From Lepidodermella squamata (lineage: Eukaryota > Animalia > Gastrotricha): a stretch of 64,000 bases of DNA. Positions 767 through 24,215 of the stretch are shown here, one piece after another. The notes beneath the pieces are model-generated. The model searched no databases, had not been told where the DNA came from, and saw nothing but the letters and a program-made list of their open reading frames with translations. The stretch is taken from contig JBLDXI010000054.1 of NCBI GenBank assembly GCA_047495785.1, positions 2,170,001-2,234,000 on the forward strand. Direction: 5' to 3'. Positions within the stretch are counted from its first letter, which is position 1. Each line of letters starts with the position of its first letter. The translations under genes and the position numbers were made by a program.

Positions 767-824
767 GTTTTCGAGAAGTTCAAGCTGCTCTTTTTTCAAA
801 TTGATTTTATTCCTTCGACTTGGA
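767..824 (-). pseudogene. Orphaned 3' end of coding exon 1 of homeobox copy 1 (start of HD5)
   Basis: 731-824 aligns with 16952-17045 and other copies; GT donor at 766; it is the continuation of sequence ending at 4631. Confidence 0.85.
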
Positions 825-907
825 TTGGAAAATATCTGCGTATCGATTTTCGAATTCTAAGATAGGAGACGTTTTATAAAAATAACTGATTGATTGCAAC
901 CTGACAA

Positions 908-1597
908 ATGGCTAGCAACACCTTGCGAATCAAACTTCTGCAGATGGCCGAAAGCGATGAAATAAGTGAATTAACCAAGAAACTTGGTTTCTCGATAGCT
1001 TCTATGCTCGGCGATTTGGTCTCGATCGAGACTGAGCGGAAGGATGAAATATTGCTGGTCACTCAACAGTACCAGCAATTTGTCGAAGAAGTCAAAGAAG
1101 ACTGTGCCGACAACGCCGAAAATGTGATTGATGCTATGAAACAAACCCTCAACGAGGTCAATGACAATGGACGTGTCATCGAGGCTGTACACGAGGCCAT
1201 GTCCCAGCGCGACAGGGCGAACAATCTGCTCATTACTGGCATCACGGTTCCGGATGGCAACACGTTCGGGGCCCTGAACGACCTCGTCAACTGTATGGGG
1301 ATCAAGGGATTTGATGTTAATGACCGTATTTGCCGAGCTAATATCATCGTTAACAACAAAGACGAACTGCCGTCCAAAATTATCGTCCAACTCAGGTACG
1401 GGTCCGACAAGAAGCTGTTCCTCGAAAACGCCCCGAAGTTGCGCAAAGTTAGGGGCTGGGAGAAGGTCTTCATCAGCAAGGACTTAACTCCTAGCCAAGC
1501 CAAGGTCGAATTCGAAAAGCGAGAAAGAAGAAGGCTTCAGCAAACACAGACTGGCGCACCGACCAAAAAGAAACTTGAACGCCCTGGTGAGGATTAG
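908..1597 (+). CDS. LINE ORF1 (coiled-coil + RRM-like nucleic-acid-binding protein)
   Basis: Heptad-rich N-terminus, then NNLLITGI...KIIVQL...VFISKDLTP motifs typical of CR1/L2-type ORF1. Confidence 0.8.
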   Translation: MASNTLRIKLLQMAESDEISELTKKLGFSIASMLGDLVSIETERKDEILLVTQQYQQFVEEVKEDCADNAENVIDAMKQTLNEVNDNGRVIEAVHEAMSQRDRANNLLITGITVPDGNTFGALNDLVNCMGIKGFDVNDRICRANIIVNNKDELPSKIIVQLRYGSDKKLFLENAPKLRKVRGWEKVFISKDLTPSQAKVEFEKRERRRLQQTQTGAPTKKKLERPGED

Positions 1598-1684
1598 GAA
1601 CTCGGCGCTCTGTCCTCCAAAGTGACGCTCGGAAACGGCACTCCAAACAATAATCAAATATTAACCGATGAATTATCTGTGAAT

Positions 1685-4483
1685 ATGCCATGCTACGTTA
1701 TTAATACGAGACAGTTAACTAAACCTTGTAAAATATCGAAACTACTCCTAGATCTTATTACTCTAAATATCATGTTTGCTTTCGTGACTGAAACCTGGCA
1801 CGATGAAGATGTTAATACCTCTTTCTTTGAAAATAATGGCTATAGTGTTCACAGAGCTAACCGCTCAGACAGAGGGCATGGAGGGTCTATGCTGTTAGTT
1901 CATAAATCGCTCGAATCTATTCTTATTGCCAATACCTCTATAAACGGATGGTGTGAGATTGTCATTTGTGATGTCCTAATCAACAAAACAAAGCTTCGTT
2001 TGTGCTGCGTGTATAAATCTCCTGGCGCTGACAGCACCGTAACAGAAGAAATGTGTAAGTTCATTGAGAATCACTTGACCGAATCTCTTTTTGTAATGGC
2101 TGGTGACTTCAATTTTCCGGACATAAAGTGGAACAATTTTTCTAATTGTGGAGGTGACAAAGAGCAACTGTTCATCAACTTAGTAAATGATATTAACGGA
2201 AATCAACTGGCCACCGAACCTAACGGACCAGATCGTAAAAACATTCTGAATCTTATTATCACAAATAATCCTATGTTTATTACTGACATTGTTACTGATA
2301 ACTCTTTCCCGAAAGAATTCACTGACCACTGCACTGTAAAATTTTCTATAAATATGAGTGGCGCTTCATCTTCTGAAAACGACAATGAAAGGTACATTGA
2401 TGATTTTTTTAATGCAGACTATGATGAAATATCAAAAATTCTCCAGAGTTTTGATTGGAATGATATACTCTCGGCATGCAAGGATGTTGATGAGCAATAT
2501 ATGCTTTTTCTGTCCATTTATAAAGATGTTTGTGACAAATTTATCGCAAAAAAACTTGTGAAAACCAAATTTAGGCTACCTTGGTGTAATCGCGAATTGC
2601 ATAGACTGGTGAGAAAGCGTGACCGAGTCTGGTCAAAATACATTCGCTGTGGACGAAGGAATATCGATCTCAATAAGTATTGTAAAATCTCTAGAAAAAC
2701 TATTGCCCTTAATAACTCACTCCGTGAATCATACGAGACTCAGCTTGCTAATAGTAATAACATGAAAAAACTTTGCAAATACGTTAACAGCCATTTGAAA
2801 TTTAAATCTCGAATACCATCAATGCTAGTGGATGGTAAAACGATATCTAATCATATAGAAAAAGCCGAACTATTTGCCGAATTCTTTAAATCTCACTTCA
2901 CTGTTGATGATAAATCTCAATTATATGTGCAAAATAAGACGTGTCCTGTTGATAATATACATTTTTCTGATTCACTAATTATTGAAACCCTTAAGGACAT
3001 AAAAATCAACTCGCCAGCTGGCCCTGATCTTGTTAATCCTTTCTTCGTTAGCAAAACTATTAATGCTATAGCTATACCTTTGTCGATAATATTTAACTCC
3101 AGCTACTCATCAGGTTCTATACCTTCTCTATGGAAATTAGCCAATGTGTCGCCTATATTCAAAAAGGGCTCTCCTAATCTGGTGAATAATTACAGACCGG
3201 TCAGTATTACTTGCTTGCCTTGCCGTGTTATGGAAACAATCATTAGGAAGCAATGGATCAGAGTTTTACTTGAAAACAAAATATTATCTTATGAACAATT
3301 CGGATTTATTTCTGAGAAGTCATGCGAGACCCAACTACTAGATTGTCTTAATAAGTGGTGTGAACTAATGGACAAAGGAATGTCGCTACATTGTATATAT
3401 TTCGACCTATCAAAAGCCTTCGACACTGTGCCACACTCTAAACTAATGAATGTCTTGGAATCTTTTAATGTTAATCGATGTCTGCTTAGCTGGATTTCTT
3501 CATTTCTAACTGGTCGCAAATTTAGAGTAAAAATACACAACTCGTTCTCTGATTGGTACGATGTTAGCAGCGGAGTCCCTCAAGGCAGTGTGCTGGGCCC
3601 TTTGCTATTCCTACTTTATATAAATGATCTTCCTAAATATATAAAATTTAGTATTATTCGTATGTTTGCCGACGACATCAAATTATTTCCGCACACTTCT
3701 CTTACTCCGGTTGACAAAGAAAAAAATATTTTTGACTACAGCTACATTCAAAAAGATGTTGATAGCATTGTAAATTATCTTAAAGAACGACAACTGATTC
3801 TAAATTCTGAAAAATGCGTTATATTAAAAATTAATACCTCTGAATCTGTAAATATAAAAATCGGGAATAACTATCTTGAATGTGTTGACGAAATTCGTGA
3901 CCTTGGTGTAATTGTCGATAGTAATCTGAACTTCTCTAATCACTGTGCTAAGACTGTGGCAAAAGCTAGAAAAATATGTGGCATGATACTTCACTCCTTC
4001 CAGACTAAGAAAGTTGATATATTAATGAAAGCTTTCGATATCTATGTACTACCTATAGTTCTTTATTGTAGCACAGTATGGTCTCCTAGGTTTATCGGTG
4101 ACCAGAAGTTGTTAGAAAGTGTTCAAAAAAATTTCACGTGGCGAGTCATGAAAACACACGACTATGAATTAAGGCTTCGTTCTCTTAATCGCTTAAGTAT
4201 TATTCAACGCCACCAAGTAAGGGACCTGTGCGTTACAACTGATATTCTAAAAGGAAATGTTAACTTGCATACCACTTGCTTTTTCGATATTAAAAAATCT
4301 AATTATGACACGCGTAGTCACAAGTATTATCTCTTAATGCGTAAATCTCATCTCGATGTATTGTATAATTTTTTCAGCTATAGAGTAGTTAATAAGTGGA
4401 ACAAATTGCCTGTAAATATTATTGATATCAAAGATAGACTTATCTTTAAAAATAATGTTAAAAATTCTATCTCAATGCTGTGA
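1685..4483 (+). CDS. LINE ORF2: apurinic-like endonuclease + reverse transcriptase
   Basis: APE motifs (VTETW, GGS, VYKSP, GDFNFP, TDH); RT motifs (NYRPVS, DLSKAFD, GVPQGSVLGP, FADD, DLGV); CR1-type C-terminus TRSH...FFSYRVVNKWNKLP; first ATG at 1685, frame open from 1598. Confidence 0.95.
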   Translation: MPCYVINTRQLTKPCKISKLLLDLITLNIMFAFVTETWHDEDVNTSFFENNGYSVHRANRSDRGHGGSMLLVHKSLESILIANTSINGWCEIVICDVLINKTKLRLCCVYKSPGADSTVTEEMCKFIENHLTESLFVMAGDFNFPDIKWNNFSNCGGDKEQLFINLVNDINGNQLATEPNGPDRKNILNLIITNNPMFITDIVTDNSFPKEFTDHCTVKFSINMSGASSSENDNERYIDDFFNADYDEISKILQSFDWNDILSACKDVDEQYMLFLSIYKDVCDKFIAKKLVKTKFRLPWCNRELHRLVRKRDRVWSKYIRCGRRNIDLNKYCKISRKTIALNNSLRESYETQLANSNNMKKLCKYVNSHLKFKSRIPSMLVDGKTISNHIEKAELFAEFFKSHFTVDDKSQLYVQNKTCPVDNIHFSDSLIIETLKDIKINSPAGPDLVNPFFVSKTINAIAIPLSIIFNSSYSSGSIPSLWKLANVSPIFKKGSPNLVNNYRPVSITCLPCRVMETIIRKQWIRVLLENKILSYEQFGFISEKSCETQLLDCLNKWCELMDKGMSLHCIYFDLSKAFDTVPHSKLMNVLESFNVNRCLLSWISSFLTGRKFRVKIHNSFSDWYDVSSGVPQGSVLGPLLFLLYINDLPKYIKFSIIRMFADDIKLFPHTSLTPVDKEKNIFDYSYIQKDVDSIVNYLKERQLILNSEKCVILKINTSESVNIKIGNNYLECVDEIRDLGVIVDSNLNFSNHCAKTVAKARKICGMILHSFQTKKVDILMKAFDIYVLPIVLYCSTVWSPRFIGDQKLLESVQKNFTWRVMKTHDYELRLRSLNRLSIIQRHQVRDLCVTTDILKGNVNLHTTCFFDIKKSNYDTRSHKYYLLMRKSHLDVLYNFFSYRVVNKWNKLPVNIIDIKDRLIFKNNVKNSISML

Positions 4484-4616
4484 TGCGGATGGACAGGGCG
4501 CATAAGTGTCCCTGGCTCCAGATTTATCAATATATATGTGATATATATAACTACTTAGTATCTATATGATAGATACCTAAAAAATTGTAACATGTTGGGA
4601 GCAAAAATAAAACTAA

Positions 4617-5447
4617 CTAACTAACTAACTGACGGTCTCGAAATCGACATCGCATCCGGCAGAACCACATTTTGATGCGCTCTACTGAAAAACCTGTTTT
4701 TACGGCCAGGTCTTCCACTTCCGCCTTCCCCGGGGAAGAATTGGCTAGAAAAGCGCTCCTCAATACGTCAAACTGATCCTTATTCATCGGACGCTTCTTG
4801 TGCTCCATTATTTTGGGGTCCCGATTCCTGAGAAGCCAACCATAAACTTTCCGTCGATTTTCGGACATTTCTCTGGCCACGGAGTAACTGAGTTTCGCTA
4901 GTGATTTATCCTGGTTTTTCCTCCAGGCTTCCAAGTGGCGGCGCAATTCTTCAAGCTGCCAGCTTTCGAATTTCTTATTTGCTGGAGTTGTCTCTGCAAA
5001 TGATTGTCGGCGCTGCTGATCTTGATACATTGCGTGCCATTCAGAGCCTACGGTTCCGCGTCTACGACGACGAAACCACTGACGAACCATCAACTCTTGT
5101 AATCCGGTGACATCTGCCAATTCCTTAATATCTTTCACTGCAGGATAGGCGTTGGCTTCGAATGCGTTGGCAAGTATTTCCTGTTGCGCTCTAGATGTGT
5201 AATATCGAGATTTAGCCCTTGCAACCGCTATGATCTTAGTGTCGCAACGGCGGTGGACCCAATTATAGACACGTTCCTTATCCTCTCCGATTTCTTCAGC
5301 TAAACGTTTGCTCATTACGCAGAGTCGCTCATCGGTACGGTTTTTCTGCCAATCTTCCAGCCTCTTCTGCATTATTTCAAGCTGCCATGGCTCATATCCA
5401 AGCCGCGGGCCATACTTCTTCCGCAGTTTTTCCTTGCCAACACTCAT
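4617..5447 (-). CDS. Multi-homeobox gene copy 1, truncated to 4 homeodomains by CR1 insertion (276 aa)
   Basis: ATG and HD1-HD4 open; the stop comes from the antisense (AACT)n tail; functional status unknown. Confidence 0.75.
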   Translation of the reverse strand: MSVGKEKLRKKYGPRLGYEPWQLEIMQKRLEDWQKNRTDERLCVMSKRLAEEIGEDKERVYNWVHRRCDTKIIAVARAKSRYYTSRAQQEILANAFEANAYPAVKDIKELADVTGLQELMVRQWFRRRRRGTVGSEWHAMYQDQQRRQSFAETTPANKKFESWQLEELRRHLEAWRKNQDKSLAKLSYSVAREMSENRRKVYGWLLRNRDPKIMEHKKRPMNKDQFDVLRSAFLANSSPGKAEVEDLAVKTGFSVERIKMWFCRMRCRFRDRQLVS

Positions 5448-5590
5448 TTGTTATTATGAAACCTAGTTCAGAAAGAATGCAATTTTACGACATCTGTCAA
5501 TGAATCGTTTCAACTTATAAAATAACGTTCGTCCATTATTTTAAAGAAGAAGGTATTTTATCGGATTGTTTAATCGGCATCTAGCAATAT

Positions 5591-5650
5591 CAGCTTGCCG
5601 AGAATAAACCGCATATGCGGTGAAACCCAGTTCACTCCATGCGCATTTCA
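5591..5650 (-). promoter_or_regulatory. Conserved 5' non-coding exon/promoter block of homeobox genes (copy 1)
   Basis: Block with splice donor and palindrome ACCGC-N4-GCGGT recurs at ~14871-14930, ~18412-18470 and ~23545-23600. Confidence 0.55.
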
Positions 5651-7927: not shown

Positions 7928-9438
7928 TCATTGTCCATCATTTGTTGATGTTTTCTATCTCTTGTTCCTTCGATAATCAAACCACCTCCTGAGACGCTTG
8001 ACACCAACGTTCATAACTGAGGAGAGATTTTCGTAATCTGACTGGTTTGGGCATCGCTTACGTCGACACAGCTCTTCCAATTGTTGAATTTGAAAACGCG
8101 TGAACAACTTTGTCTCTCCTTTTGATCCGATCTTCCCTGAGGATATGCCACTCAGGACGTTTCGCACTTTCGCCGGAGTCAGGTTTGTAACTGATGCCAA
8201 GTGTTCTAGCCGTTTAGCGTAGCGCCTGCACGGAATTGCTGCTTCTTTTTCGAGGATCGCAATTTGCCAGGGCTCTAACGCCCATGTGCGGCGTTTTCCA
8301 CCAATGGCGTTCAGTTTACGACTCTACGAATAATTAATTCGGAAACTACATGGTATATGGCTCAACTTACGTTTTCGACTGTCACTTTGTCGCACAGGCG
8401 AGTATTCGTTTGAATTCTTCTCCTTTGAAACCAACCTGCCACCGTAGACCTTTTGACCTGAAGAGCTCTAGCAAGCTCATCTTTACGCGTCCCTGTAGGC
8501 GCTACATTCACAGCAAATTCCTAATTGTTAAATAATTCAATCAAAAGGATTGAACAACGAATAAAATATTCACTTTTTCAAGAAGTTCAATCTGCTCTTT
8601 CTTCAAATTAATGTTATTCCTTCGACTTGAATTGTCTCGAAATCGAAATCGCATCCGGGCGAACCACATTTTCATTCGTTTTACCGACAAACCTCAGGGC
8701 CAGCTCTTCCAATTCCGCCTTCCCCGGGGAAGAATTGGCTAGAAAGGCGCCCCGCAATATGTCGAACTGCTCCTTTTTCATCCGAGGCTTTTTGCGCTCG
8801 ATATTTTTCGGGCCCCGACTCCTGAGAAGCCAGCGATAAACTGTATTTCGATTTGCGGATATTATTCTGGCAACGGAGTAACTGAGTTTCGCTAGCGATA
8901 TATCCTGGTTTTTCCTCCAGGCATCAAAGCGGTGGCTCAATTCTCCGATCTGCCAGCTCTCGAATTCTCTCTTTGCTGGAGTTTTCACGGTATTTGAAGT
9001 TCGGCGTCGCTGGTCTCGACATCTTGCGAGCCCTTTTGACCCTAGGGTTCCGCGTCTATGACAATGAACCCCCTCGTGAATCCTCAACGCCTGTAATCCG
9101 GTGATAGCTGCCAGTTTCTCAATATCTTTCCCTTCAGGATAGGCGTTGGCTTCGAATGCGTTTGCAAGTGTTTCATTTTGCGTTCTAGATTGGCAATATC
9201 GAGATTTAGTCTTTGCAACCGCCATGTCAGTGTCGCGACGGCAGTAGACCCAACGATAGACACGCTCATTATCCTCTCCGATTTCTTCAGCTAAACGTTT
9301 GCTCACTATGCAGAGTTTCTCATCGTTTCGGTTATTCTGCCAATCTTCTAGTCTCTTCTGCATTATTTCAAGCTGCCAAGGCTCAAATCCAAACCGAGGG
9401 CCATACTGCTTCGGCAGTCCTTCCTTGCCAACACTAAT
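7928..9438 (-). pseudogene. Multi-homeobox gene copy 2 (pseudogene)
   Basis: Exons 9438-8574, 8520-8371, 8323-7928; start codon ATG>ATT; 5-nt deletion frameshift in HD4 (~8695); HD2 helix 3 degenerate (IHEGVH); premature TAG at 7955. Confidence 0.85.
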
Positions 9439-9487
9439 TTGTTATAATCATGAAAAACTTGAGGAAACCTATGTCACAAAAAAAGAA

Positions 9488-12400
9488 GGATCAAACACCG
9501 AAGGTGGGCAGAGGACCCCGAGGAAGCCTGCTGGCGATCAGGGCCAGCAGAGACCGGGGCACCGGGTTCGCAGAGAGGCGTAGTTGCTCGACAGCTTCGC
9601 GGATCGGGAGGACGAAGCGGACAGCGTTGTCGGCGTAACGGCGCTGCGTCTGTTCAAAGAAACGAGGGAGACTTGGAACACCGGGGTGACGTTCGAGGCC
9701 CGAGACTCTGACGCGGTCATCGCGACCGACGTTCAGTATTGCCCGAAGGCAATCGTTCTGAAGGACATCAAGGCGCTTGAGTTGCCGCTTGGGTGCAGTG
9801 CAGAAAACGATGTTGCCATATGTTCTCGTGGTTCGAAGGAGGCTTAGATACGCGGTTCGACGCCACCGGCGAGAAAGGCCCGAGGCTCGACAGACACTGT
9901 GCGATAAATTGCGGGTGCAGCGGGTGATCACGCGGTCCATGTGGGCCTTCCAGGTCAACTTAGCATCGAGATGGACACCAAGAATGCGCATGACTGGTAA
10001 TTGCGGGATTGCCGAGACATCGAGAGTTAGTCGGGCATCGTAGCTGCGTCACGCGAATGGCATCACTTCACTCTTGGAGGCTTTGAACCTTTGCCGCCAC
10101 TCGAGGGCCCACGTTGCCATCCGGTCGATCTCATTATGGGTAGCACGCTCAGCTTCCGGAAAATACACCCCTTCTCCGACAACTGTTAGGTCATCAGCAT
10201 AGGCATCGAGATAACACCCTGGGGCAGGCGGCGCGGTCAGCAGATCTGAAGTATAGACGATATAGAACAGCGGTGACAGCGGCGAGCCTTGCGGTACGCC
10301 GCAGTTGACGATAACCTGCCGACAAAGGAAGCCCGCAACAGAAAGGAACACGAGCCTGCAAGTTGCGATCGCGAAGGAAATCGGTCAGCCACCGAACGAG
10401 GTTTCGAGGAAGCGGCAGTTTAGCAAGCTTGAACGCCAGGCCAGCACTCCACCTGGACGTCCAGGCCAACAGCGATCACTTTTCCGTGTCGAGAACGGGC
10501 AAAGTTAACGGTGTGGGCGACGCGTAGAGGGACATCTGGTGCAGAGTGGTGCGCTCGGAACGCATACTGGTTGTCGGGCAGGGCGTGGTGGCTCTTCAAA
10601 AACTCGCCAAACCAACGCGCCACGATAGACTCCAACAGCTTTCCGTCGACGGGAAACAACGAGATCGGTCGCTGGGACGAGACAGTGCCCAAAGGCTTGC
10701 CAGCTTTCGGCACGGGTATCACAGCAGCCTCCTTCAATTCGAGCAGTACGTAACGCGATCCGAGACTCAGGTTAAACAGGTGCCGGAGGTGGCGCTGCAG
10801 CACCGGTCCACCCCACTTGTAGAAGATGGGACGGCGGGCGGCGATACTCGACAAGACGCAGGAACGGGTCACCGGGAACAGGCATAGGAATTGCAATCAA
10901 CTGCTCGATCAGCGTACGCGAAAATTCGAGACGGTCAGGTGGGCGGCTGTCAACCGGGAAATCGACAGATATTGAGGTCGTATAATGATCGCTGGTGTAT
11001 CTATCGCCAACAATCACTCCACTGCGCAGCAGGCGCAGTGCGGCGTCGTTAAGGACCCAAACATCGAGGGTTGACAAGGTACCAGTGTCGAGGTGAAGGC
11101 GAGTCGGTTTCGGTGAGGGCAAGATCGTGAGGCCGAGGCGGGTTGTAGCATCGTGGAGCGAAAAGCCGCTGGGGTTCCGCTGAAGAAGCACGGGAGGCCG
11201 AGGCGGGCAGCAGCAGCAAACTCTTCGTCAAGCCACCGTTAGACGTCGGGGGACAGTAGCCGGTGATCACACGCACGGCTTATTCCTACGACAGTTAGGC
11301 TGCTCCGAGACGACGATCGTCCCTCTGCGAACCAGGATCGCCGACCCGCCATGTGCGTCGCCAATCAAGGCTTCTACAAGGTCCTGTGCCCTATCACAAC
11401 GGAAGGTAGCATACCCTTGCAAAGAGAAGGAAGTAGGAGTAAAAGAAGGATTCATTAATAAAAAGTGATGAAATTGATCTAGAACACATTAAAACTCAAC
11501 CACTTTGTCATTACTACCGCGGCAGTTCCATTGAGAAAGAAAACGACAGCCTACCATGTTGCGCTGGTGGTAGGCGGGCTAGACATCGGCGCAGCCGGGA
11601 ACAGATGAGTCGCGAGAAAACGACCACGACCGGACCCAAAAGCGGCGACAAATTCGTAGCCGGACCACAAGACCGCAGGAGCGTCTTGACAAGGTCAGTG
11701 ACCTCAACGAAGGCGGTTTTAAGCCGTTTAAGACGCAGGCTAGCAGCCACCTCTTTCGCCTTTCGCCTCAAACTGCTTCAGCAACATGTCCATCATCTCG
11801 AACAGGCGAGCACCATCAGGCGACTGGAACTGGTTACTGATGGCAGGGTTAACAGGCGGTTGTCGCGGGGCAGGTGGTGGCTGTTGACCGATGATGTCTC
11901 GGGTCGCGACCCGGTAAGTACGGCCTTGGGCACGTGTGGGCTTGGCGGGTTGCGGGGTTAACTGCTTCTGGCGAGCAATTCGGGCGCGTTTCGTTTCAGC
12001 GCGGGCAACACGGACCTCCGATTCTTGAATTTTAGCAGCCTTGAACTGGAGACAGCCACGCCACATACTCGAATGAGGAGGCGAACCACACACGGACATG
12101 TGACATGCAGGCTAGAGCTTCACGTGGCGCTTCACAGCCAGCCGTTTTGTGATTAGGCGAGGTGCAGCGACCACACAAGAGATCTTTCTCAGGAACAACG
12201 CAATCGGCCTCGATGTGTCCAAACCGGGCACATCGCATACACTTCGGAGGCAGGAGGCCATCTTTGAGCTCGCGGAATTTGACTCAACGATTCAGGAATT
12301 CAAGGCCGACCGTCAGAGCCTCATCGCGCAGCTTATGTGTCTTATGAACGACGAGCGGAGTGGGTAATCGCCGGGGTGTTGTACAGGCATGTCACGAATC

Positions 12401-13080: not shown

Positions 13081-13176
13081 AATGTCAAAATTTACGCTAA
13101 GAAAAATGTATAGGTATCTAATTTATTATGATTAAAATGTGCAAAAGGGTACTTCGGGAACAAAAGGGAGAAAGAT

Positions 13177-14690
13177 TCAATGTTCATCATATTGTGACGC
13201 TTTTTCCCTGTACCTTCGGTTGCTGAACCAGTTCCTCAGACGCCTAATACCAACGTTCGTAACTGTGGAAAGATTTGTGAAGTCTGACTGGGTTGGCCAA
13301 GACGTACGCCGAAACAGCTCTGACATGTGTTGAAGTTGAGAACGTGTGAAATAGTTCACTCCCTTGGATCCGGTCATTCTTGAGGATATGCCTCGCAGGA
13401 AGCTTCTTACTTTCGCCGGAGTCAGGTTTGTAACCGCTGCCAAGTGTTCAAGCCGCTTGGCGTAGCGCTTGCACGGAACTGCAGCTTCTTTTTCCAGGAT
13501 TTCAATTTGCCAGGGTTCCAACGCCCATTTACGGCGGTCTCCGCCACCAGCGTTTAATTTACGCACCTACAAATAATTAATCCAGAAACTACTTGGTATA
13601 TGACTTAGGCTTACGTTTTCGACTGTCACATTGTCACTCAAGCGAATATTCGATTTATCTCTTCTCCTTTGAAACCAATGGGCTACAGTGGACCTTTTCA
13701 GCTGAAGAGCTTTAGCCAGCTCATCTTTACGCGGCATTGTAGGCGCTACATTTACAGCGAATTCCTAATTGACAAACAATCAAATTTTAGAGATTGAACA
13801 ACGAATAAGACATTCACTTTTTCGAGAATTTTAATCTGCTCTTCGTTTAGAGTTACTTTCTTCCTTCGGCAAGCATGGTCTCGAAATCGCCATCGACTTA
13901 CAGTAAACCAATTTCTGATGCGTTTTACTGACAAGCCTGTCTTTAGGGCCAGATTTTCCACTTCTACCTTTTCCGGGTGAGAGTTGGCAAGATAAGCGCC
14001 CCGCAATATGTCGATCTGCTCCTCATTCATCCAACGCTTCTTGTGCTGAATTATGTTCGGGTCCTGATTTCTGAGAAGCCAACGATAAACTTTCAGTCGA
14101 TTTGCAAACATTTTTCTGGCCACAGAGAAACTGAGCTTCCAGAGCGAAATAGCTTGTGGTTTCCTCAAGGCTTCTGATAAGTGGCGGTGCAATTCTTCAA
14201 TCTGCCAGGGCTGAAATTCCGTGCATGCTGGAATAGTCACGGTCAATGAACGGTGTTGCTTCTCTCGGTATATTGCGCGCCCTTTAGAGCCTAAGGTTGG
14301 GATTCTACGAGTCTGAAACCACTTGCGAATCTTCAACTTCTGTAATCCGGTGACAGCTGCCAGTTCCTCAATATCTTTCCTCCCAGGATAGGCGTTGGCG
14401 TCGAACGCGTTGGTAAGTATTACCTGTTGCGCTTTAGATTTGATGTAATTTCGAGGTTTAGCCCTTAAAACCGCTGTGTCAGTGTTGCGATGACGTTTGA
14501 CCCAACAATAGACACGCTCCTTATCCTCTCCGATTTCTTCAGCTAAACGTTTGCTCATTATGCAGCGTCTCTCATGGTTACAGTTATTCTGCCAATCTTC
14601 TAGCCTCTTCTGCATCACTTCGAGCTGCCAAGGCTCAAATCCAAGCCGGGGGCTACTCTGCTTCCGCAGTTTTTCCTTACCAACACTCAT
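13177..14690 (-). CDS. Multi-homeobox gene copy 3, intact, 470 aa, seven homeodomains
   Basis: Exons 14690-13818, 13764-13615, 13566-13177 joined by phase-0 GT-AG introns of 53 and 48 nt; repeated Q..IL...F....YP......LA..TGL....V..WF...R patterns. Confidence 0.88.
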
Positions 14691-14976
14691 TTGACATAAT
14701 GAAACCTGAGGAAACCTAGATCAGTAAAAATAACGCAAGTCACAAAAACACCACACTCGAAGCAATGAATTGTTTCAGCCCATGAAATAACGTTCGTCCA
14801 TTTTCTGACTTCATTTAAAGACGAAGTAAACTGTCTCTTTTGATTTTATCGGCACCTAGCATTTAGCATTCAGCTTACCGATACTACACCGCTAGTGCGG
14901 GGAAAGCCAGCTCTCTCGATGAGCGCTTCGAACGTGAGAGGAATTTTGACATCGGCGTAACCGATCAACCAAAATA

Positions 14977-15595: not shown

Positions 15596-15700
15596 CTGCC
15601 AAAGCTCATATCCCAGCCGTGGGCCAATCTTCCTCCTCAGTTCTTCCTAGCCCACACTCATTTGTTATAATGGAAACCTGAGGAAACCTATAGGTCACAA
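15596..15700 (-). pseudogene. Relic 5' end of a seventh homeobox copy
   Basis: ATG at 15661 then MSVG*EELRRKIGPRLGYELWQ, with the conserved acceptor ctatag/gtttcctcag upstream; fused to spacer sequence at ~15585. Confidence 0.75.
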
Positions 15701-16346
15701 AAATAATTTTCGAGTGCCCTGAAATCACGTTTTGGTATTTCTTAGTTGTCACGATCGATCGTACAAAAATCAATATTAATTCAGCGTAACATTCTCTATA
15801 AGGCGGAATGTCCAATCCAGAACTCATACAGCGCCTCGAAATAGTAGAATTATTCAAACAGTTACTCTTGGTATATTTCGACTTGGGTTCCGCTACAGCA
15901 CGTTCCACTCACCGCAAATTTGGTTCCGCTGAAAAAGATATTTGAGTTAATGCATCATACCTAAAATTAGGGGGTAAGGTTACCTAAATATGCATAAAAT
16001 TATCGGCGTGAGACGGCGTTCAACGATGGCTAAGACCTTGTGGGTAGGAAAGTTCAATGTTGTTTTAATATGCCCGAAGAACTTTGTGAAGGACTCGGTC
16101 CCGCCTAAGTAGCGCCACATCAGAAGGATCCGGAAGTGATGGCTGAGGCAGAGGAGCAGGTGGCGTACCTGACACGGGAAATATGCTCGGCATGGCTTGC
16201 GCTGAAGGCAAAGCCGCATAGCGAGCCGAAAGCCGAAAGTCTTGACTAGGAAATATGTAAATCTATAGATTTTTATGCTGTTTTTTACGTTTTATGTAAA
16301 TCAAGAGAAAATGTTAAAATGTAATTCGTGAGAAAGATTCATTGAT

Positions 16347-17822
16347 TCAAGATTCATCTTTCGACGCGTTTTTCATGTTCCTTCGGTTGTCAAACCACAT
16401 CTTGAGAAGCCTGATACCAACGTTCATAACTGAGGACAGATTTTCGTAGTCTGCCTGGGTTGGGCAATGCGTGCGTCGAAACAGCTCTTGCATTTGTTGA
16501 AGTTGAGAATGCGTGAAAAATTTGTTCGCTCCTTTTGATCCGATCCTTCCTGAAGATATGCTTCTCAGGACGCTTCTCACTTTTGCAGGAGTCATGTTTG
16601 TAGCCGATGCTATGTTTTCAATCCGCTTGGCGTAGAGCCTGCACGGAATTGCTGCTTCTTTTTCGAGGATCGCAATTTGCCAAGGCTCTAATCCCAAAAA
16701 GCGACACTCTCTGTCAGCAGCGTCCAATTTACGCATCTAAGAACGCCAAATGAAGAAATTACATTGGGCACGATTGAAGCTTACGTTTTCGAGAGTCACT
16801 TTGTCGCACAAGCGAATATTCGATTTATCTCTCTTCCTTTGAAACCAACGTGCTACAGCAGGCCTTTTCAGCTGAAGCGCTTTAGCAAGCTCATCTCTAC
16901 GCTGCACTGTAGGCGATACATTCACAGCGAATTCCTAATCGACAAATTATTCAATTACAAATATTGGACAACGAATAAGTCATTCACTTTTTCGAGAAAT
17001 TCAATCTGCTCTTCTTTCAAATTGATTTCATTCCTCCGACTTGGATAGTCTTGAGATCGCGATCGCATCCGGCAAAACCACTTTATGATTCGTTTTACAG
17101 ACAATCCTGTCTTTGAGGCCAGCTCTTCCACTTCCGCCTTTCCAGGGGAAGAATTGGCTAGAAAGGCGCCCCGCAGCATGTCGAACTGCTCCTTATTCAT
17201 CCGAGGTTTTCTGGGGTCGACTTTTTTCGGGTCCCGATTCCCGCGAAGCCAACGATGAACTTTGTCTCGATTCGCGGATATTTTCCTAGCCACGGAGAAA
17301 CTGAGCTTACCCGGCGAAATTTCCTGGGTTTTCCTCCATTCTTCCAAGTGGCGGCGCAATTCTTCAACCTGCCAGCTCTCGAATTGTCTCTTCGCTGGAG
17401 TTGTCGCGGTATCTGAAGTTGGGCGTCGCTGTTCTCGATGTCTACGCCAAAGAAACCACTGACGAATCTTCAACTCCTGTATTCCGCTGACAGCTGCCAG
17501 TCCCTTAATTTCTTTCACTGCAGGATAGGCGTTAGCTTCGAATGCGTTGGCAAGTATTTCCTGTTGCGCTATAGATTTGTAATTTTGAGATTCAGCCCTT
17601 ACAACCACCATGTCAGTGTCGCGACGGCAGTTGACCCAGCGATAGACACGCTCCTTATCCTCTCCGATTTCTTCAGCTAAACGTTTGCTCATTATGCAGT
17701 CTCTCATCATTACGGTTCTTCTGCCAATTTTCTAGCCTCTTCTGCATTAATTCATACTGCCATGGCTCATATCCACACCGTGGGCTTTTCTTCTTCCGCA
17801 GCTTTTCCTTGCCAACACTCAT
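16347..17822 (-). pseudogene. Multi-homeobox gene copy 4 (frameshift in HD1; could reinitiate at 17710)
   Basis: Exons 17822-16988, 16934-16785, 16736-16347; frameshifting indel at ~17700; in-frame deletion after HD2; remainder open. Confidence 0.75.
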
Positions 17823-17872
17823 TTGTTATAATGAGACCTAGGTCAGTAAAGAATGCAAGTTTATTACATCTC

Positions 17873-18292
17873 CACTTAAAACCACAGCGCAACACAAAAC
17901 ACCAATTTGCAGCAGGATAAAATTGCAACACAACTTATTTCTGTAACTTGTAAGTTCGATATAAGAAGAAGACATAGGAAAGGGGCAGTTTTTTACGCTC
18001 AATCCGAATATGAAAACCGAAAGGGACGATTTTCAATTTTTACCCGGGTAGTACCCAGTTTTACCCGGTTTTACCCGGTTTTTACCCGGTTTACCCGGTA
18101 CCAACGTCCCTGACATTCAAACAATTACCACGGTCGTATTCCGCGCCCCCGATAACATCTATTGGTATGCCTGAATTATACTTGTTTCACTTAATGCCAA
18201 AAACAAGGTCGTGTGTTGCAAAAATGTGTGCTGCAAAATATTAAATTTTGTGTTGCACTTTGGTTATTTCTGTTACGCTGTGGTGGTGAGCC
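17873..18292. mobile_element. Mutator-like MITE with 9-bp target-site duplication, containing a nested ~90-bp inverted-repeat element
   Basis: TTACATCTC at 17864-17872 and 18293-18301; subterminal inverted repeat ACCACAGCG(C/T)AACA; inner agggacg...cgtccct (~18022-18111) with (TTTACCCGG)n. Confidence 0.7.
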
Positions 18293-19361
18293 TTACATCT
18301 CACCACACTTGAAGGAATGAATTGTTTCAGCTTGTGATATGACGTTGACCCACGACGTGACTCTAAAAGACAAGGAAATTTTATTTGATTGTTTTATCCG
18401 CATGTAGCATTCAGGTTACCGAGAATACACCGCTCGTGCGGTAAAAGCCAGCTCACTTGATGCGCACTCCAAACTTACGGCATCGGCCTAACGGTTCAAT
18501 CAAAATACTTCCAGCCATCAAATTCTGCTAGAGGAATGAATGCTTTTCTTTTACCCATATTGTCCTCCATTTACCAGACCCAAGAAGCGGAACCAAATGT
18601 TGGAGTTTTCTGGTGGCCTGAAATAACGTTTTTGTTATTTATTGGGTGTCAAGATTGGCCGCTAATAAAAATTGGGGACTTTTTTCGAACACTTGCTGTT
18701 CCTCAACAATGAGGTTCCTCGGGCTCTCATTTAGACTATCAGCAGTCCGAACCCCTTTGCCCACAAAATCTAACGAGCCACACAATTGCTGCTCAAATTT
18801 GATAAAGAGAAAAATTGAAAACCTCTCGACGGGGTCCGAAGTTTGCATAAACTGTATAGATACCCTTCTAGCACAATAGAACGTTTTCAAATTCTTATAT
18901 AGCTCAAACAAGGGCCCTGTTCACGTCTCCACTAATGACTGATGGAATTGACAACTTGACTCGGTTGAAAATCGAGGTCGGGGTGTTCGTTTCTTGAGGC
19001 TGCATCGAATTTTAGGCTACTTTGAAATTCGTTTCGAACAGTGGCGCGAATTCGTATGCAGTCGATGGTAGTCCATGGATCTAGTGACTACTACTTCTAC
19101 GGCCGGGAGCTGGAAGGAGGTTTCGCGGATACATGAGGCGGTTGCAAGCTTTACGAGACGCGGATCTAGCGGCGCTGAGGGACTGCAATATCGACACTCC
19201 CGAGAGATTTTCTTGGCAAGGCACTGCGTTATAGCCAAAGTGGCATAGCAAGCCGAAAAAACAGACACATTTCACAAAATGTTATGACTATAAATGTATA
19301 GATTTAAATTAAAAGGATTAAAATGTACTTTGCGAATGAAAGGAAGGAATAAGATTCATTG

Positions 19362-20858
19362 TCAATCATTGTTTGACGCTTTGCTCCGCCTTCGATTATT
19401 AAACCACGTCCTCAGACGCCTGATACCAACGTTCATAACTGAGGAAAGATTTTCATAATCTGACTGCGTTGGGAAACGCTTACGTCGAAACAGCTCCTCC
19501 ATTTTTTCAAGTTGAGAAAACATTAAATAACGCAGCGCTGCTCTTGATTTCATCTTTCTTGAGGATAGACGTTGCAGGATGCATCTCACTTTAGCAGGAG
19601 TCAGATTTGTCACGGATGCTATGTGTTCTAACCGTTTGGCGTAGCGCCTGCACGGAATTGCGGCTTCTTTTTCGAGGATCGCAGTTTGCCAGGGCTCTAA
19701 TGCCCAGTTACGGCGCTCTCCGTCACCGGCGTTCAATTTACGCATCTACGTATGATATGAATTCGGAAATTACATGGTATATATGACTTATGCTTACGTT
19801 TTCGAGAGTCACTTTGTCGCACAGGCGAGTTTTCGTTTGATTTCTTTTCCTTTGAAACCAACCTGCTACCACGGACCTTTTCAGCTGAAGAGCTTTAGCC
19901 AGCTCATCTTTACGCGGCATTGTAGGCGCTACATTTACAGCGAATTCCTAATTGACAAACAATCAAATTTTAGAGATTGAACAACGAATAAGACATTCAC
20001 TTTTTCGAGAATTTTAATCTGCTCTTCGTTTAGAGTTACTTTCCGCTGAACAGGATGGTCTCGAAATCGCTCGCGACTTCCGGCAAACCACCTTCTGATG
20101 CTTTTTACTGACAAACCTGTCTTTCGGGCCAGCTCTTCCACTCCCGCCTTTCCCGGGTAAGGATTGGCTAGAAAAGCGCTCCTCAATATGTCGAACTGAT
20201 CATCATTTATTTTGCGCTTGGATATCTTCCGGTCCCGATTCCTGAGGAGCCAACGATAAACTTTCTGTCGATTTGCCGACATTTTCCTGGCCACAGAGAA
20301 ACTGAATTTACCCAGCGAAGTGTCCTGAGTTTTCTTCCAGGCTTCTAAGTGGTGGCGCAATTCTTCAATCTGGCAACTCTTGAATTCCGTCCTTGCTGGA
20401 GTTTTCACGGTCAATAAAGTTCGGCGTTGCTGCTCTCGGTATATTGCGCGCCCTTTAGAGCCTAAGGTTGCGTTTCTACGAGCCTGAAACCACACGCGAA
20501 CCTTCAACTCCTGTAATCCGGTGACAGCTGCCAGTTCCTCAAAATCTTTCCTCCCCGGATAGGCGTTGGCTTTGAACGCGTTGGCAAGTATTTCCTGTTG
20601 CGCTTTAGATTTAATGTAATTTACAGGTTTAGCCCTTACAACCACCATGTCAGTGTCGCGTCGGCAGTGGACCCAACGATAGACACGCTCCTTATCCTCT
20701 CCGATTTCTTCAGCTAAACGTTTACTCATTTTGCAGTGATCCTCGTTACGATTATTCTGCCAATCTTCTAGCCTCTTCTGCATTACTTCGAGCTGCCAAG
20801 GCTCAAATCCAAGCCGTGGGCTAATCTTCTTCCGTAGTTTTTCCTTGCCAACACTGAT
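19362..20858 (-). pseudogene. Multi-homeobox gene copy 5 (open frame but ATG>ATC; upstream exon lost)
   Basis: Exons 20858-20001, 19947-19798, 19745-19362 all open; next in-frame ATG at 20783 lies inside HD1. Confidence 0.65.
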
Positions 20859-20999
20859 TTGTTAAATAATGGAAACCAGAGGAAACCTAGGTCAATAAAA
20901 AAAATCCGACACTTCACCATGCAGTCGAAGCAATGGATGAATTGTTTCAACTTTTAACATCCTTGTTTATATCTCTAGAAGACGACATGGACAGGAGCA

Positions 21000-21232
21000 A
21001 GGCCGAAGGACATAACTTCGCTCTTGCTAGCATTGAACATTTGGCGCCGTTTGCACGCCCACGGTCGATACGGAGACTTCTGCACGGAAATAAGGTCGAG
21101 CTCCGCTTGGAGATAACGTTGGGCTAAGGGGAACTGCGGCATTTGCCAGCGACAGTCAAGTCATCAGCATACGCTTGCAGCAAAGTGCCATCCACGCTCG
21201 GTGCGGACAATAGATTAGCGGTGTACAAGATA
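21000..21232 (-). mobile_element. RT fragment of the same LINE family as 1-730
   Basis: Encodes ILYTANLLSAPSVDGTLLQAYADDLTV, nearly the same as the peptide at ~391-470. Confidence 0.85.
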
Positions 21233-21888
21233 TTTCGGCTCTTATTTTCGGTAAATTCTAAATTCGAAGTTTATTGTCCCTTAAGTTGTGTGACATGAAA
21301 TAAAAATAGAAATACAAAAGGCGAAAATGTCACCGCCAAACGTAAGGCTCGTGGTGGCTAGCCGAAACGCGCTTGCCAGCTTGAGCGGTAAGTAAACGTA
21401 ACTCGTTCTTCCATGTCGAGTTATGACTTATGATAGGCCAGGGTTGTCCACGAGTCGAAAAATCGAGGCCCGCGCGAGTAAATATCTCCGAAACCGTCGT
21501 CCTGTAGACAAGTTTGTGATAGGCCGGAGAGGCCAAAAATCGGCCACCCCAAATTCCAAAATTTTCTTTCTCTCACTTCTTTCGGCACACAATACGAAGA
21601 GCTAAAAAAACTGATCAAGTTAGAAGTGGAAAATGAACACACCGATACTCGACCAGGTGTGAAACGACGAGGATGTTTAAAGGGGACAGGTCGATTCCAA
21701 AAATAGCCCAGCCATTATTTCTTGAAAACCCTGTATAGCAATCACGCGAAGTTCGAAAGAATCGATTTTCGACAATCCATATCGATCGATTATCGATGTT
21801 TAGAAAATCGATTCGCCTATTCAGAAAAATTATCTTAATTTATCAAATTTATTAGAATTAGGACTTCGTGAACAAAAGGGAGAAAGAT

Positions 21889-23394
21889 TCATTGTTCATC
21901 ATTTTTTGACGGTTTTTTCTTGTTCCTTCGACTGCTGAACCAATTCCTGAGACGCCTGATACCAACGTTCACAACTGTGGAAAGATTTGTGAAGTCTGAC
22001 TGGGTTGGCCAAGACGTACGCCGAAACAGCTCTTGCATGTGTTGAAGTTGAGAACGTGTGAAAAACTTTGTCTCTCCTTTTGATCGGGCCTTTCTTGAGG
22101 ATGTGCCTCGCATGAAGTTTATTACTTTAGCCGGAGTCATGTTTGTAACCGATGCCAAGTGTTCGATCCGTTTGGCGTAGAGCCTGCACGGAATTGCGGC
22201 TTCTTTTTCGAGGATCGCAGTTTGCCAGGGCTCTAATGCCCAATTACGGCGCTCTCCGTCACCGGTGTTCAAATTACGCAACTGAGAAAGTTAAAGTCAG
22301 ATAAATTGAATGGAATACGATATAGGCTTACGTTTTCGAGAGTCACTTTGTCGCACAAGCGAGTATTCGTTTCATTTCTTCTCCTTTCAAACCAACGTGT
22401 CAGGAAAGACCTCTCGAGATTAAGAGCTTTAGCTAGCTCATCTCTACGCTGCACTGTAGGCGCTACATTCAAAGCGAATTCCTATAATTGATCACAAATT
22501 CAATTACAATGATTGAAAAACGAATAAGACATTCACATTTTCGAGAAGTTCAATCTGCTCTTCGTTTAGAGATACTTTCCGCTGAACTGGATGGTCTCGA
22601 AATCGCTGTCGACTTCCGGAAAACCACTTTTTGATGTACAGTCTTGGCAAACCTGTCTTTAGGGCCAGCTCTTCCTCTTCCGCCTTTCCCGGATAGGAAT
22701 TAGCAAGAAAAGCTCTCCTTAATATGTCGAATTGATCATCATTCACCTTACGCTTCTTAGGCTGGATTATTTTCGGGTCCCGATTACTGAGAAGCCAACG
22801 ATGAACTTTCTGTCGATTTGCGGACATTTTTCTCGCCACGGAGTAACTAAGTTTTCCTAGCGAAATGTCCTGTGTTTTCCTCCATTCTTCCAAGTGGCGG
22901 TGCAATTCTTCAATCTGCCAGCTCTTGAATTTCTCATTTGCCGGAGTTGTCTCTGCAAATGAAATTCGGCGTCGCTGATCTCGATATATTGCGAGCCCTT
23001 TAGAGCCTAATAATGCGCGTCTACCACGCGCAAACCAATAGCGAACCTTCAACTCTTGTAATCCGGTGACAGCTGCCAGTTCCTTAATATCTTTCCTTTC
23101 AGGATAGGCGTTGGCTTCGAATGCGTTGGCAAGTATTTCCTGTCTCGCTTTATTTTCTCGAGATTTAGCCCTTGCAACCGCCATGTCAGTGTCGCGACGC
23201 GAGTAGACCCAACAATAGACACGCCGCTCAGTCTCTCCGATTTCTTCTGCTAGACGTTTGCTCATTACGTAGTGTTCCTCGCTACGGTTTTTCTGCCAAT
23301 CTTCTAGCCTCTTCATCATCACTTCGAGCTGCCAAGGCTCATATCCAAGCAGTTGGCTACCCTTCTTCGGCAGTTTTTCCTTACCAACACTCAT
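21889..23394 (-). CDS. Multi-homeobox gene copy 6, intact, 466 aa, seven homeodomains
   Basis: Exons 23394-22537, 22481-22332, 22281-21889; same intron positions and phase as the other copies; upstream conserved block at ~23545-23600. Confidence 0.88.
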
Positions 23395-24215
23395 TTATTA
23401 TAATGAAACCGAGGAAACCTAGGTGAGTGAAAAATGCATTTTAACCACACTTGAAACAATTAATTGCTTTAAAGTTGGGATGTATAACGTCTGGCTGCTA
23501 AGACCAAGTAATGTTGTCTGTTAATTATATCGGCGTCTAGAATTCAGCTTACGGAGAATAACCGCTTGTGCGGTGAAAGCCAGCACGCTCGATGCGCACT
23601 TCAAAGTTGTCTCTAAAACGGATTAAAATTAGAATTAAAAATAAAAATATTTATATTATAAAAATCGAACTATTTTTAACTTAAATTTTCTTCATTTTTT
23701 TTATTTTTTTTTATATTACAATCTGTGAACCGATGTTGCTATTTTTATAGCTATAAGCAAATCGAAAAACGAAATGAACTCGCATCGGTCCACCAATGTC
23801 GTAGCCTAGCAGCCCCGAATTGCATCGGAAATATTCATTATTCACGACGCTTGCCTCGGCTGTTGGCTCGGCTAGTAACTGGCATATTGCGCAAAAAACA
23901 ACACAGAAAAAATTGGGCTCGCGCACATATGATTAATATCGATTTCACACACGAGTGCGCGCGCGATTGGTGTGTGCGCCTTTTTTGCGCCAGCCGCCTC
24001 AATGCGCGTCGCTACGGGCGACGCCACGTCGGATTGATTAAGGCACAACCGCCTTATTGTTATACACACACCATCCGTCTATTCAACTGGCCGTCGCAGG
24101 TTCCGAATCGAAGCCGTGTTTGTCGCTAGTTATCAACACTTCCTCGCCGGATATATGAAGCGCCGGGCAATTTCCGGTTGAAAATTGATTTTTATTGAAA
24201 AAAACGCGCGCTTCA

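What the first reader, a model, noticed from the sequence alone, without database searches (positions are those of the whole stretch)
767..23600. Tandem array of seven-homeodomain genes under birth-and-death evolution
Seen: once the 48-55 nt introns are spliced out, the fragments in the ORF track form one ~470-aa protein made almost entirely of seven back-to-back homeodomains with no other domain. There are six head-to-tail copies plus a relic: two intact, one truncated, three damaged. Known: multi-homeobox genes are rare and lineage-specific (mammalian DUX arrays, ZHX, nematode and amphioxus multi-homeobox genes), and I do not recognise this one as any named class. Inference: a lineage-specific polydactyl homeodomain family, possibly acting in germline or early embryo.
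Basis: partly seen in the sequence, partly recalled or inferred. Interest (0 to 1): 0.9.

Follow-up and report, generated by a model that had tools for sequence, protein, structure and literature searches.

The report
Fast-diversifying seven-homeodomain gene array
A microscopic animal (probably the gastrotrich Lepidodermella squamata) carries a row of duplicated genes for a very basic protein made of seven DNA-binding-type homeodomain modules; most copies have decayed, but the residues that read DNA bases changed two to three times faster than neutral, so selection seems to keep switching what these proteins bind, though their targets and expression are unknown.

Summary
The array is real: six minus-strand copies plus a deleted relic. 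Copies 3 and 6 are intact (470 and 466 aa, pI above 10). Introns are 47-55 nt GT-AG, and splicing intron 1 completes homeodomain 5 without a gap. Only four of the seven units (HD2, 4, 5, 7) are clear homeodomains. HD1 and HD6 score weakly, HD3 only through HD1, and HD6 lacks Trp48 and Arg53. Asn51 is missing from all units except HD7 of three copies. Purifying selection is weak overall (pN/pS 0.71), but base-contact positions 47/50/51/54 have omega 2.3-3.1 (p about 1e-8). This holds with per-segment trees and multi-base mutations, and control surfaces stay at or below 0.9. Gene-conversion tracts and LINE-broken copies fit birth-and-death evolution. I found no orthologue or RNA run. Multi-homeodomain proteins are known (CEH-100, DUX, ZHX), and a fungal-looking metagenome contig carries a convergent eight-homeodomain cluster. 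The scan has already reported similar arrays at five or more other loci of this genome. Best guess: effector-less DNA binders tracking fast-changing repeats (about 45%). Verdict: new variant of a known kind.

The parts
4635..5447 (-). Copy 1, coding exon 1 up to the end of HD4; open frame, cut by a LINE insertion
767..826 (-). Copy 1, rest of exon 1 (helix 1 of HD5) beyond the LINE; intron 1 donor follows at 766, then a second LINE remnant
827..4634 (+). Full-looking non-LTR retrotransposon (ORF1 908-1597; ORF2 1622-4483 with endonuclease and RT; short tandem-repeat tail), inserted with a 1-nt overlap and no loss of host sequence
1..730 (+). Remnant of a second LINE family (RT) that cuts copy 1 in intron 1
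5463..5598 (-). Inferred 5'-UTR intron of copy 1 (GC donor, 136 nt)
   Evidence: inferred, no RNA
7955..9438 (-). Copy 2, damaged: start codon ATT, HD2 Trp-Phe lost, 5-nt deletion in HD4, early stop after HD7; introns 8573-8521 and 8370-8324
9485..13100 (-). Decayed LINE that replaces the 5' exon and promoter of copy 2 and part of the 3' flank of copy 3 (ends approximate)
13818..14690 (-). Copy 3 (intact) coding exon 1: HD1, HD2, HD3, HD4 and helix 1 of HD5
13765..13817 (-). Copy 3 intron 1, 53 nt GT-AG, phase 0, inside HD5; identical to intron 1 of copy 5 (conversion tract)
13615..13764 (-). Copy 3 exon 2: helices 2-3 of HD5 and linker
13567..13614 (-). Copy 3 intron 2, 48 nt GT-AG, phase 0
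13177..13566 (-). Copy 3 exon 3: degenerate HD6, canonical HD7, stop; AATAAA at 13127
14716..14878 (-). Inferred 5'-UTR intron of copy 3 (163 nt), with a conserved non-coding exon upstream
   Evidence: inferred, no RNA
15596..15706 (-). Relic copy: acceptor, ATG and about 22 codons (nonsense codon at 6), fused to 3'-flank sequence at 15510-15586
16347..17822 (-). Copy 4, damaged: 2-nt deletion near 17700 (stop at codon 50) and 33-nt deletion after HD2; introns 16987-16935 and 16784-16737
   Evidence: the frameshift lies inside a run contig with no differences (record 8)
17838..18476 (-). 5' exon of copy 4 and its 5'-UTR intron (18419-17838), enlarged by an insertion of about 450 nt
19362..20858 (-). 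Copy 5: frame open (463 codons) but start codon ATC, 5' exon replaced by a LINE fragment, no AATAAA; introns 20000-19948 and 19797-19746
21005..21231 (-). LINE (RT) fragment upstream of copy 5
21889..23394 (-). Copy 6 (intact, 466 aa): exons 23394-22537, 22481-22332, 22281-21889; introns 55 and 50 nt; AATAAA at 21853
23419..23608 (-). Copy 6 inferred 5'-UTR intron (23552-23419) and conserved 5' exon
   Evidence: inferred

Best explanation
A lineage-specific family of four-exon genes (one non-coding exon inferred) encodes 55-kDa, very basic nuclear proteins that are a chain of homeodomain folds. Shown: gene structure, domain content, weak purifying selection on the fold, and positive selection on the DNA-facing surface of the recognition helices, mainly in HD2, 4, 5 and 7. 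Inferred: these four domains dock in the major groove and together read a long composite site; without Asn51 they are free of the usual TAAT core, so each paralogue reads a different site. The degenerate HD1, HD3 and HD6 are more constrained and probably serve as spacers, backbone clamps or partner surfaces. With no effector domain, the protein most likely acts by occupying and packaging its sites. The most likely driver of repeated specificity change is a fast-changing set of targets inside the genome (transposons or satellites), as with zinc-finger arrays. Duplication and gene conversion make new domain combinations; obsolete copies die by LINE insertion and point lesions.
For: omega at positions 47/50/51/54 is 2.29 (all seven units) and 2.92 (HD2/4/5/7), LRT for omega>1 p=4e-8 and 7e-9. 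With per-segment trees and double/triple mutations it is 2.35 and 3.08, and 3.79 without copies 2 and 4; three control sets of other helix positions give 0.90, 0.67, 0.72. A site model blind to structure (M1a vs M2a, p=1.7e-7; 2.8e-5 with double mutations) peaks at positions 50, 47, 54, 44, 51. Core positions are conserved (pN/pS 0.43). These are the known specificity positions, and domains without Asn51 tend to have divergent motifs (PMC3371834). pI 10.2-10.6. Conversion tracts copy 3/5 and copy 3/6. Only the two intact copies keep AATAAA. Precedent for a fast-evolving homeodomain binding satellite DNA: OdsH (PMC3335601).
Against: No binding, target, localisation or expression data; no RNA run holds the locus. 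Nothing tested here links the proteins to repeats; the LINE remnants within the array are equally explained by relaxed selection on redundant copies. No repressor or effector domain. Loss of Asn51 normally weakens binding. Only six sequences, two of them pseudogenes, analysed with my own codon-model code. About two thirds of sites fit omega near 1, so constraint is weak.
Confidence: 0.45

Rival explanations
1. DUX/ETCHbox-like developmental regulators: transcription factors of the oocyte or early embryo whose tandem copies neofunctionalise towards new gene targets, with no conflict involved.
For: Mammalian ETCHbox genes show tandem arrays, 45-79% pseudogenes, gene conversion and positive selection in the homeodomain (PMC8208926). 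DUX4 double homeodomains are the top PDB matches, by domain count.
Against: No activation domain: the protein has about 10 residues outside the domains at either end. In ETCHbox genes selected sites are scattered (N-terminal arm, helices 1-2, position 43), not centred on 47/50/51/54. No phylogenetic link to DUX. No expression data.
Confidence: 0.3
2. Sequence-independent basic chromatin proteins (protamine-like or spacer role) whose recognition residues merely drift.
For: 21% Lys+Arg and pI above 10; Asn51 lost; overall pN/pS as high as 0.71.
Against: Drift gives omega up to 1, not 2.3-3.8 confined to base-contact positions while neighbouring exposed positions stay at 0.9.
Confidence: 0.1
3. 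The recognition helices have become a surface for RNA or for a fast-evolving protein partner or antagonist, and selection acts on that interface.
For: Helix 3 of some homeodomains also binds proteins (title cited in PMC8208926) and Bicoid binds RNA (own knowledge). HD6 lacks Trp48 and Arg53.
Against: Trp48, Phe49 and Arg53, which dock the helix on DNA, are kept in HD2, 4, 5 and 7, and the selected residues are precisely the base-reading ones.
Confidence: 0.08
4. A decaying, silent array, or an artefact of whole-genome amplification.
For: Four of six copies are broken; no RNA evidence; the probable source genome was made from amplified DNA (PMC11660948).
Against: Copies are about 80% identical, far too divergent for amplification chimeras. 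pN/pS 0.71 (95% CI 0.60-0.83) with a quarter to a third of sites strongly constrained. Splice sites, start and poly(A) signal are intact in copies 3 and 6. Run contigs match the assembly without differences over several pieces, though that run is probably the source.
Confidence: 0.07

Closest known systems
C. elegans CEH-100, CEH-99, CEH-83, DUXL-1 and neighbours (PMC4448998)
   Same: Tightly packed, divergent multiple homeodomains (12 in CEH-100); lineage-restricted; lying in a duplication-rich region; intragenic domain duplication.
   Different: Those are single or paired genes with no orthologues even in sister species. Here there is a multi-copy array with a fixed seven-position layout and measured positive selection. 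Orthology was not tested directly; CEH-100 did not stand out among the named hits.
Mammalian DUX4/Dux arrays and ETCHbox genes (PMC8208926)
   Same: Tandem arrays of fast-evolving homeobox genes with pseudogenes, gene conversion and positive selection; DUX4 is the top PDB hit.
   Different: One or two PRD-class domains that keep Asn51 (WFQN in the DUX-named hit) plus an activation domain (own knowledge). No clade with the window domains.
ZHX/HOMEZ and ZFHX (ZF class)
   Same: Four or five divergent homeodomains per protein; nearest rows in the atlas shape search, at TM only 0.33.
   Different: They carry C2H2 zinc fingers and long linkers and are conserved low-copy genes; no zinc finger here.
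HOCHOB double homeodomain (Caenorhabditis ceh-91/92/93; PMC4448998)
   Same: A pair of divergent homeodomains duplicated as a unit, like the HD1-HD2/HD3-HD4 repeat here.
   Different: HOCHOB has a linker of about 17 residues with two invariant cysteines; the linkers here have none.
Drosophila OdsH (PMC3335601)
   Same: Rapidly diverging homeodomain; binds satellite DNA; the mechanistic precedent for the best explanation.
   Different: One gene with one homeodomain; no sequence link tested.
KRAB zinc-finger clusters and PRDM9 (own knowledge)
   Same: Works-like comparison: polydactyl DNA-binding arrays, birth-and-death clusters, positive selection on base-contact residues.
   Different: Different fold; they have an effector domain (KRAB, SET), absent here; their repeat targets are proven, here only inferred.
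Unnamed eight-homeodomain cluster on fungal-looking metagenome contigs (P0122, P0125, L003)
   Same: Tandem genes, 506-554 aa, pI 9.3-9.8, almost only homeodomains, Asn51 mostly missing, positions 47/50/51/54 among the least conserved.
   Different: Intronless, all eight domains canonical, no shared clade with the window domains: convergent, not orthologous.

Membership tests
Homeodomain (PF00046) | Profile match above the curated cut-off | tested here: met
   HD2, HD4, HD7 above cut-off; the exon-2 half of HD5 scores 25.2 vs 22.9; spliced HD5 36-49 bits on a local profile. Not met for HD1, HD3, HD6.
Homeodomain (PF00046) | Three-helix fold with helix-turn-helix in each of seven units | tested here: inconclusive
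   Predicted for HD1-4 and HD7; HD4 and HD7 superpose on solved homeodomains at Z 9.4 and 8.8. HD6 modelled with fused helices at pLDDT about 50. HD1 and HD3 not searched alone; HD5 not folded because it spans an intron.
Homeodomain (PF00046) | Trp48-Phe49 and Arg53 in helix 3 | tested here: met
   Kept in HD2, 4, 5, 7 of intact copies; Trp48 with Val/Leu49 in HD1 and HD3; absent in HD6.
Canonical TAAT-binding homeodomain | Asn51 | tested here: not met
   Present only in HD7 of copies 3, 4, 5, out of 39 domain copies.
DUX (PRD class) | Two PRD-class homeodomains forming a clade with DUX | tested here: not met
   Seven units; no supported grouping with DUX-named domains in a quick, poorly resolved tree; best identities about 30-40%.
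ZHX/ZFHX (ZF class) | C2H2 zinc fingers with the homeodomains | tested here: not met
   No zinc-finger hit in any exon; the protein is almost all homeodomain.
HOCHOB | Two invariant cysteines in the inter-domain linker | tested here: not met
   No invariant cysteine in exon 1; one in exon 3 lies inside HD6.
CEH-99/CEH-100 and amphioxus Muxa/Muxb | Position-by-position orthology of the domains | not tested
Birth-and-death multigene family | Tandem paralogues, pseudogenes and divergence among surviving copies | tested here: met
   Six copies, four broken, dS 0.21-0.36, local conversion tracts.
Repeat-tracking DNA-binding arrays (KRAB-ZFP-like, works-like only) | Positive selection on base-contact residues | tested here: met
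   omega 2.3-3.8, p<=5.5e-7; controls at or below 0.9.
Repeat-tracking DNA-binding arrays (KRAB-ZFP-like, works-like only) | Effector domain that recruits silencing | tested here: not met
   No other Pfam domain above cut-off apart from generic HTH models; no room outside the domains.
Repeat-tracking DNA-binding arrays (KRAB-ZFP-like, works-like only) | Binding to transposon or satellite DNA in vivo | not testable with these tools
   Needs SELEX, DAP-seq or ChIP.

The most novel reading that the evidence does not exclude
A homeodomain-based counterpart of the KRAB zinc-finger repertoire: dozens of polydactyl homeodomain genes that gave up the Asn51-TAAT rule, recombine domains by gene conversion and are repeatedly selected to recognise new transposon or satellite sequences, with the same design arising independently in fungi and nematodes.
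Probability: 0.25. Interest if true: 0.85.

Novelty: new variant of a known kind. Interest (0 to 1): 0.55.

Why it matters
Homeodomains are the textbook case of conserved, low-diversity DNA recognition. Here the fold is used as a repeated module whose base-reading residues are under diversifying selection, a pattern usually tied to zinc-finger arrays. The intact paralogues differ at most specificity positions of HD2, 4, 5 and 7, so they are a natural test set for what homeodomains without Asn51 can read. If the targets are repeats, this would be an independent origin of sequence-specific repeat surveillance in a barely studied phylum. The architecture itself is not new, and the scan has already noted similar arrays elsewhere in this genome.

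Tried and rejected
Word-index protein searches with exon 1 and with the exon-3 alignment: no hit at E<=0.001; these see only proteins of 0.55-1.75 times the query length. Metagenome contig scan: nothing confirmed. Exhaustive profile search: 1209 hits, the top ones ranking by homeodomain count, none with a position-matched layout. ESM Atlas by features: generic homeodomain clusters at 0.79 or below; by shape TM 0.33 or below. Species identification from RtcB: uninformative, 85-89% to all animals; exact look-ups of three window proteins were blank. RNA evidence: no RNA run listed; both runs laid were contigs, one probably the source DNA. Literature searches for seven-, eight- or multi-homeodomain families and for gastrotrich homeobox expansions found no description; the L. 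squamata genome paper analysed Hox genes only and filtered out aberrant homeodomains. The careful domain tree did not finish; the quick tree has few supported inner branches. Rejected: a coding 5' exon (in-frame stop directly before the ATG in copy 6); amplification artefact; plain relaxed selection. Following the operators' note, the spliced protein was built and analysed only inside local scripts; remote searches and folds were run exon by exon, so HD5 and the full-length protein were not searched or folded.
Full report
Observation. Self-comparison shows six minus-strand copies of a 1.5-1.9-kb unit between 4.6 and 23.6 kb at 76-83% identity, plus short pieces. The same sites exist in copies 2, 4, 5 and 6, with introns of 47-55 nt and a 150-nt middle exon in all. 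Copy 6 gives 466 aa. The proteins are about 55 kDa, pI 10.2-10.6, 21-23% Lys+Arg. Intron 1 has internal support: helix 1 of HD5 ends exon 1, helices 2-3 start exon 2, and the join at this site aligns to a homeodomain profile without a gap (36-49 bits). Intron 2 lies in a linker and rests on conserved GT/AG and frame alone. No RNA run holds the locus, so splicing and expression are inferred.

State of the copies. Copies 3 and 6 are intact and are the only two with AATAAA 35-50 nt after the stop. Copy 1 has an open exon 1 split by a full-looking LINE (827-4634; ORF2 with endonuclease and RT). The gene resumes at 826 with a 1-nt overlap and no loss, and a second LINE remnant then cuts intron 1. 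Copy 2 has ATT for ATG, a 5-nt deletion in HD4, loss of Trp-Phe in HD2, and a LINE in place of its 5' region. Copy 4 has a 2-nt deletion near 17700 and a 33-nt deletion. Copy 5 is open but starts with ATC and has lost its 5' exon. The relic at 15596-15706 is a 5' start fused to 3' flank. A conserved donor and acceptor upstream of the ATG imply a 5'-UTR intron of 134-163 nt in copies 1, 3 and 6, and 582 nt in copy 4; this is inferred. All RT-like remnants found with these queries lie within 1-21.3 kb.

How many homeodomains. Pfam finds HD2, HD4, HD7 and the exon-2 half of HD5. A profile built only from database proteins gives 36-57 bits for these four, 10-12 bits for HD1 and HD6, and about zero for HD3. 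Profile-profile scores against that set are 26.5 for HD1 and 24.3 for HD6 (shuffled maxima 10.6 and 8.6). HD3 scores 11.6 but matches HD1 at 93.6% probability, and HD2 matches HD4 at 96.8%. So the first four units arose by duplication of an HD1-HD2 pair. AlphaFold with shallow alignments predicts four three-helix units in exon 1 (mean pLDDT 67) and a normal HD7, but a fused, low-confidence HD6. HD4 and HD7 superpose on engrailed-type domains at Z 9.4 (rmsd 0.9, 53 residues) and Z 8.8 (rmsd 2.2, 58 residues). The fair description is four clear homeodomains and three degenerate homeodomain-derived units. Asn51 is present only in HD7 of copies 3, 4 and 5; HD6 also lacks Trp48 and Arg53.

Selection. 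Pairwise dS is 0.21-0.36 and dN/dS 0.54-0.80; pooled pN/pS is 0.71 (95% CI 0.60-0.83). Core positions are conserved (0.43), and HD1 is the most constrained unit (0.51). Positions 47, 50 and 54 are established specificity determinants and 51 reads adenine (PMC3371834). In a fixed-sites codon model their omega is 2.29 over all units and 2.92 in HD2/4/5/7, against 0.7 elsewhere (p=4e-8 and 7e-9 for omega>1; similar on a star tree). With a separate tree for each of five segments and double and triple mutations allowed, omega is 2.35 and 3.08, and 3.79 when copies 2 and 4 are dropped. Three control sets give 0.90, 0.67 and 0.72. A site model with no structural input also rejects neutrality (p=1.7e-7; 2.8e-5 with double mutations; 0.007 in the weakest subset), and its signal in the four clear domains peaks at 50, 47, 54, 44 and 51, one face of helix 3. 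Intron distances (0.23 and 0.35) agree with pS 0.24, so synonymous sites are a fair neutral yardstick. Limits: six sequences, own code, recombination handled only approximately. Conversion tracts are clear between copies 3 and 5 (13860-13690, intron 1 identical) and copies 3 and 6 (13321-13266, HD7), and segment trees differ.

Host and relatives. The host is probably the gastrotrich Lepidodermella squamata (about 90%, circumstantial). The window is 44% GC against 43% in PMC11660948. The scan's 1993 windows on 147 pieces fit 122 Mb in 157 contigs, and the second run of the same study has 101 million letters and no match, like the paper's 102-Mb C. elegans assembly. No orthologue turned up in 5.8 billion clustered proteins, in metagenome contigs or in the atlas. 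The exhaustive profile search returns multi-homeodomain proteins ranked by domain count, many unannotated with 7-17 domains and often without Asn51. In a quick tree each window position is its own clade, HD1 joins HD3, and none joins DUX, ZFH or the other families with support. One of those families is a tandem cluster of intronless eight-domain genes on contigs with fungal-looking neighbours, also variable at 47/50/51/54 (identity 0.23-0.29 against a mean of 0.48, though 43, 46, 55 and 57 are as variable). It looks like an independent origin of the same design. Earlier notes of this scan report seven- and eight-homeodomain arrays at five or more other loci of this genome, and just upstream of this window; I could not compare their sequences.

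How it most likely works. Shown: a real multigene family whose fold is conserved while its base-reading surface is driven to change. Inferred: the four clear domains bind double-stranded DNA as a chain and read a long site that differs between paralogues; the degenerate units serve as spacers or partner surfaces; with no effector domain the protein acts by occupancy. Recurrent selection on contact residues needs targets that keep changing, and the simplest such targets are transposons and satellites. OdsH is a precedent for a diverging homeodomain on satellite DNA (PMC3335601); KRAB zinc-finger clusters and PRDM9 are the analogy in form (own knowledge). I put this at 0.45, a DUX/ETCHbox-like developmental role at 0.30 (arrays, pseudogenes, conversion and selection are all known there, PMC8208926), non-specific packaging at 0.10, a non-DNA ligand at 0.08, and a dead or artefactual array at 0.07.

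Novelty. Proteins packed with divergent homeodomains are described: CEH-100 has twelve, and related genes sit on a duplication-rich arm in C. elegans (PMC4448998); multi-homeobox genes are listed as rare in PMC6118893. This family fails the defining tests for DUX, ZHX/ZFHX and HOCHOB, and I found no paper on it. What is unusual is the combination of a fixed seven-unit layout, wholesale loss of Asn51 and strong positive selection on the base-contact face. I rate it a new variant of a known kind, interest 0.55. Remote searches and folds were run exon by exon; the joined protein was analysed only in local scripts.

Noticed in passing
window 827-4634 (+): Apparently complete, young non-LTR retrotransposon (both ORFs open, short tandem-repeat tail, no clear target-site duplication; CR1/L2-like by these traits, clade not tested).
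   Followed up: partly
L003:10001-18479; L001:551-2215; L002:3306-4742 (ENA ERZ26273096): Tandem cluster of intronless genes for basic proteins of up to eight homeodomains, mostly without Asn51, on contigs whose neighbours look fungal; unannotated, and convergent with this family.
   Followed up: partly
P0121, P0124, P0128, P0130-P0133: Further unannotated proteins with 8-17 homeodomains in metagenome or transcriptome assemblies of unknown hosts; poly-homeodomain proteins seem commoner than the literature suggests.
   Followed up: no
window 28501-30882 (+), 47661-50045 (-), 50553-52934 (-): Three intronless 793-794-aa receptor-like genes; the one scanned has an ANF_receptor ligand-binding region (class C GPCR-like) and no transmembrane family hit. 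28.4-31.0 kb and 50.5-53.0 kb form an 89% identical inverted duplicate 20 kb apart.
   Followed up: no
window 46524-47522 (+); 35035-38494 (-): Ordinary single-copy genes: RtcB RNA ligase (up to 89% identical to animal RtcB) and a DYRK-like kinase recognised by eye from its ORFs.
   Followed up: partly
   Followed up: no
window 12900-18000: Run X1 holds many contigs 90-99% identical to copies 3 and 4 and very deep repeats at about 14950-15460, 15800-15980 and 17860-18000: closer paralogues or alleles and high-copy elements exist elsewhere in the genome.
   Followed up: no
window 59608-60411 (+): 267-aa ORF with an N-terminal RING-like finger and a cysteine-rich repeated C-terminal part not assigned by Pfam.
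   Followed up: no
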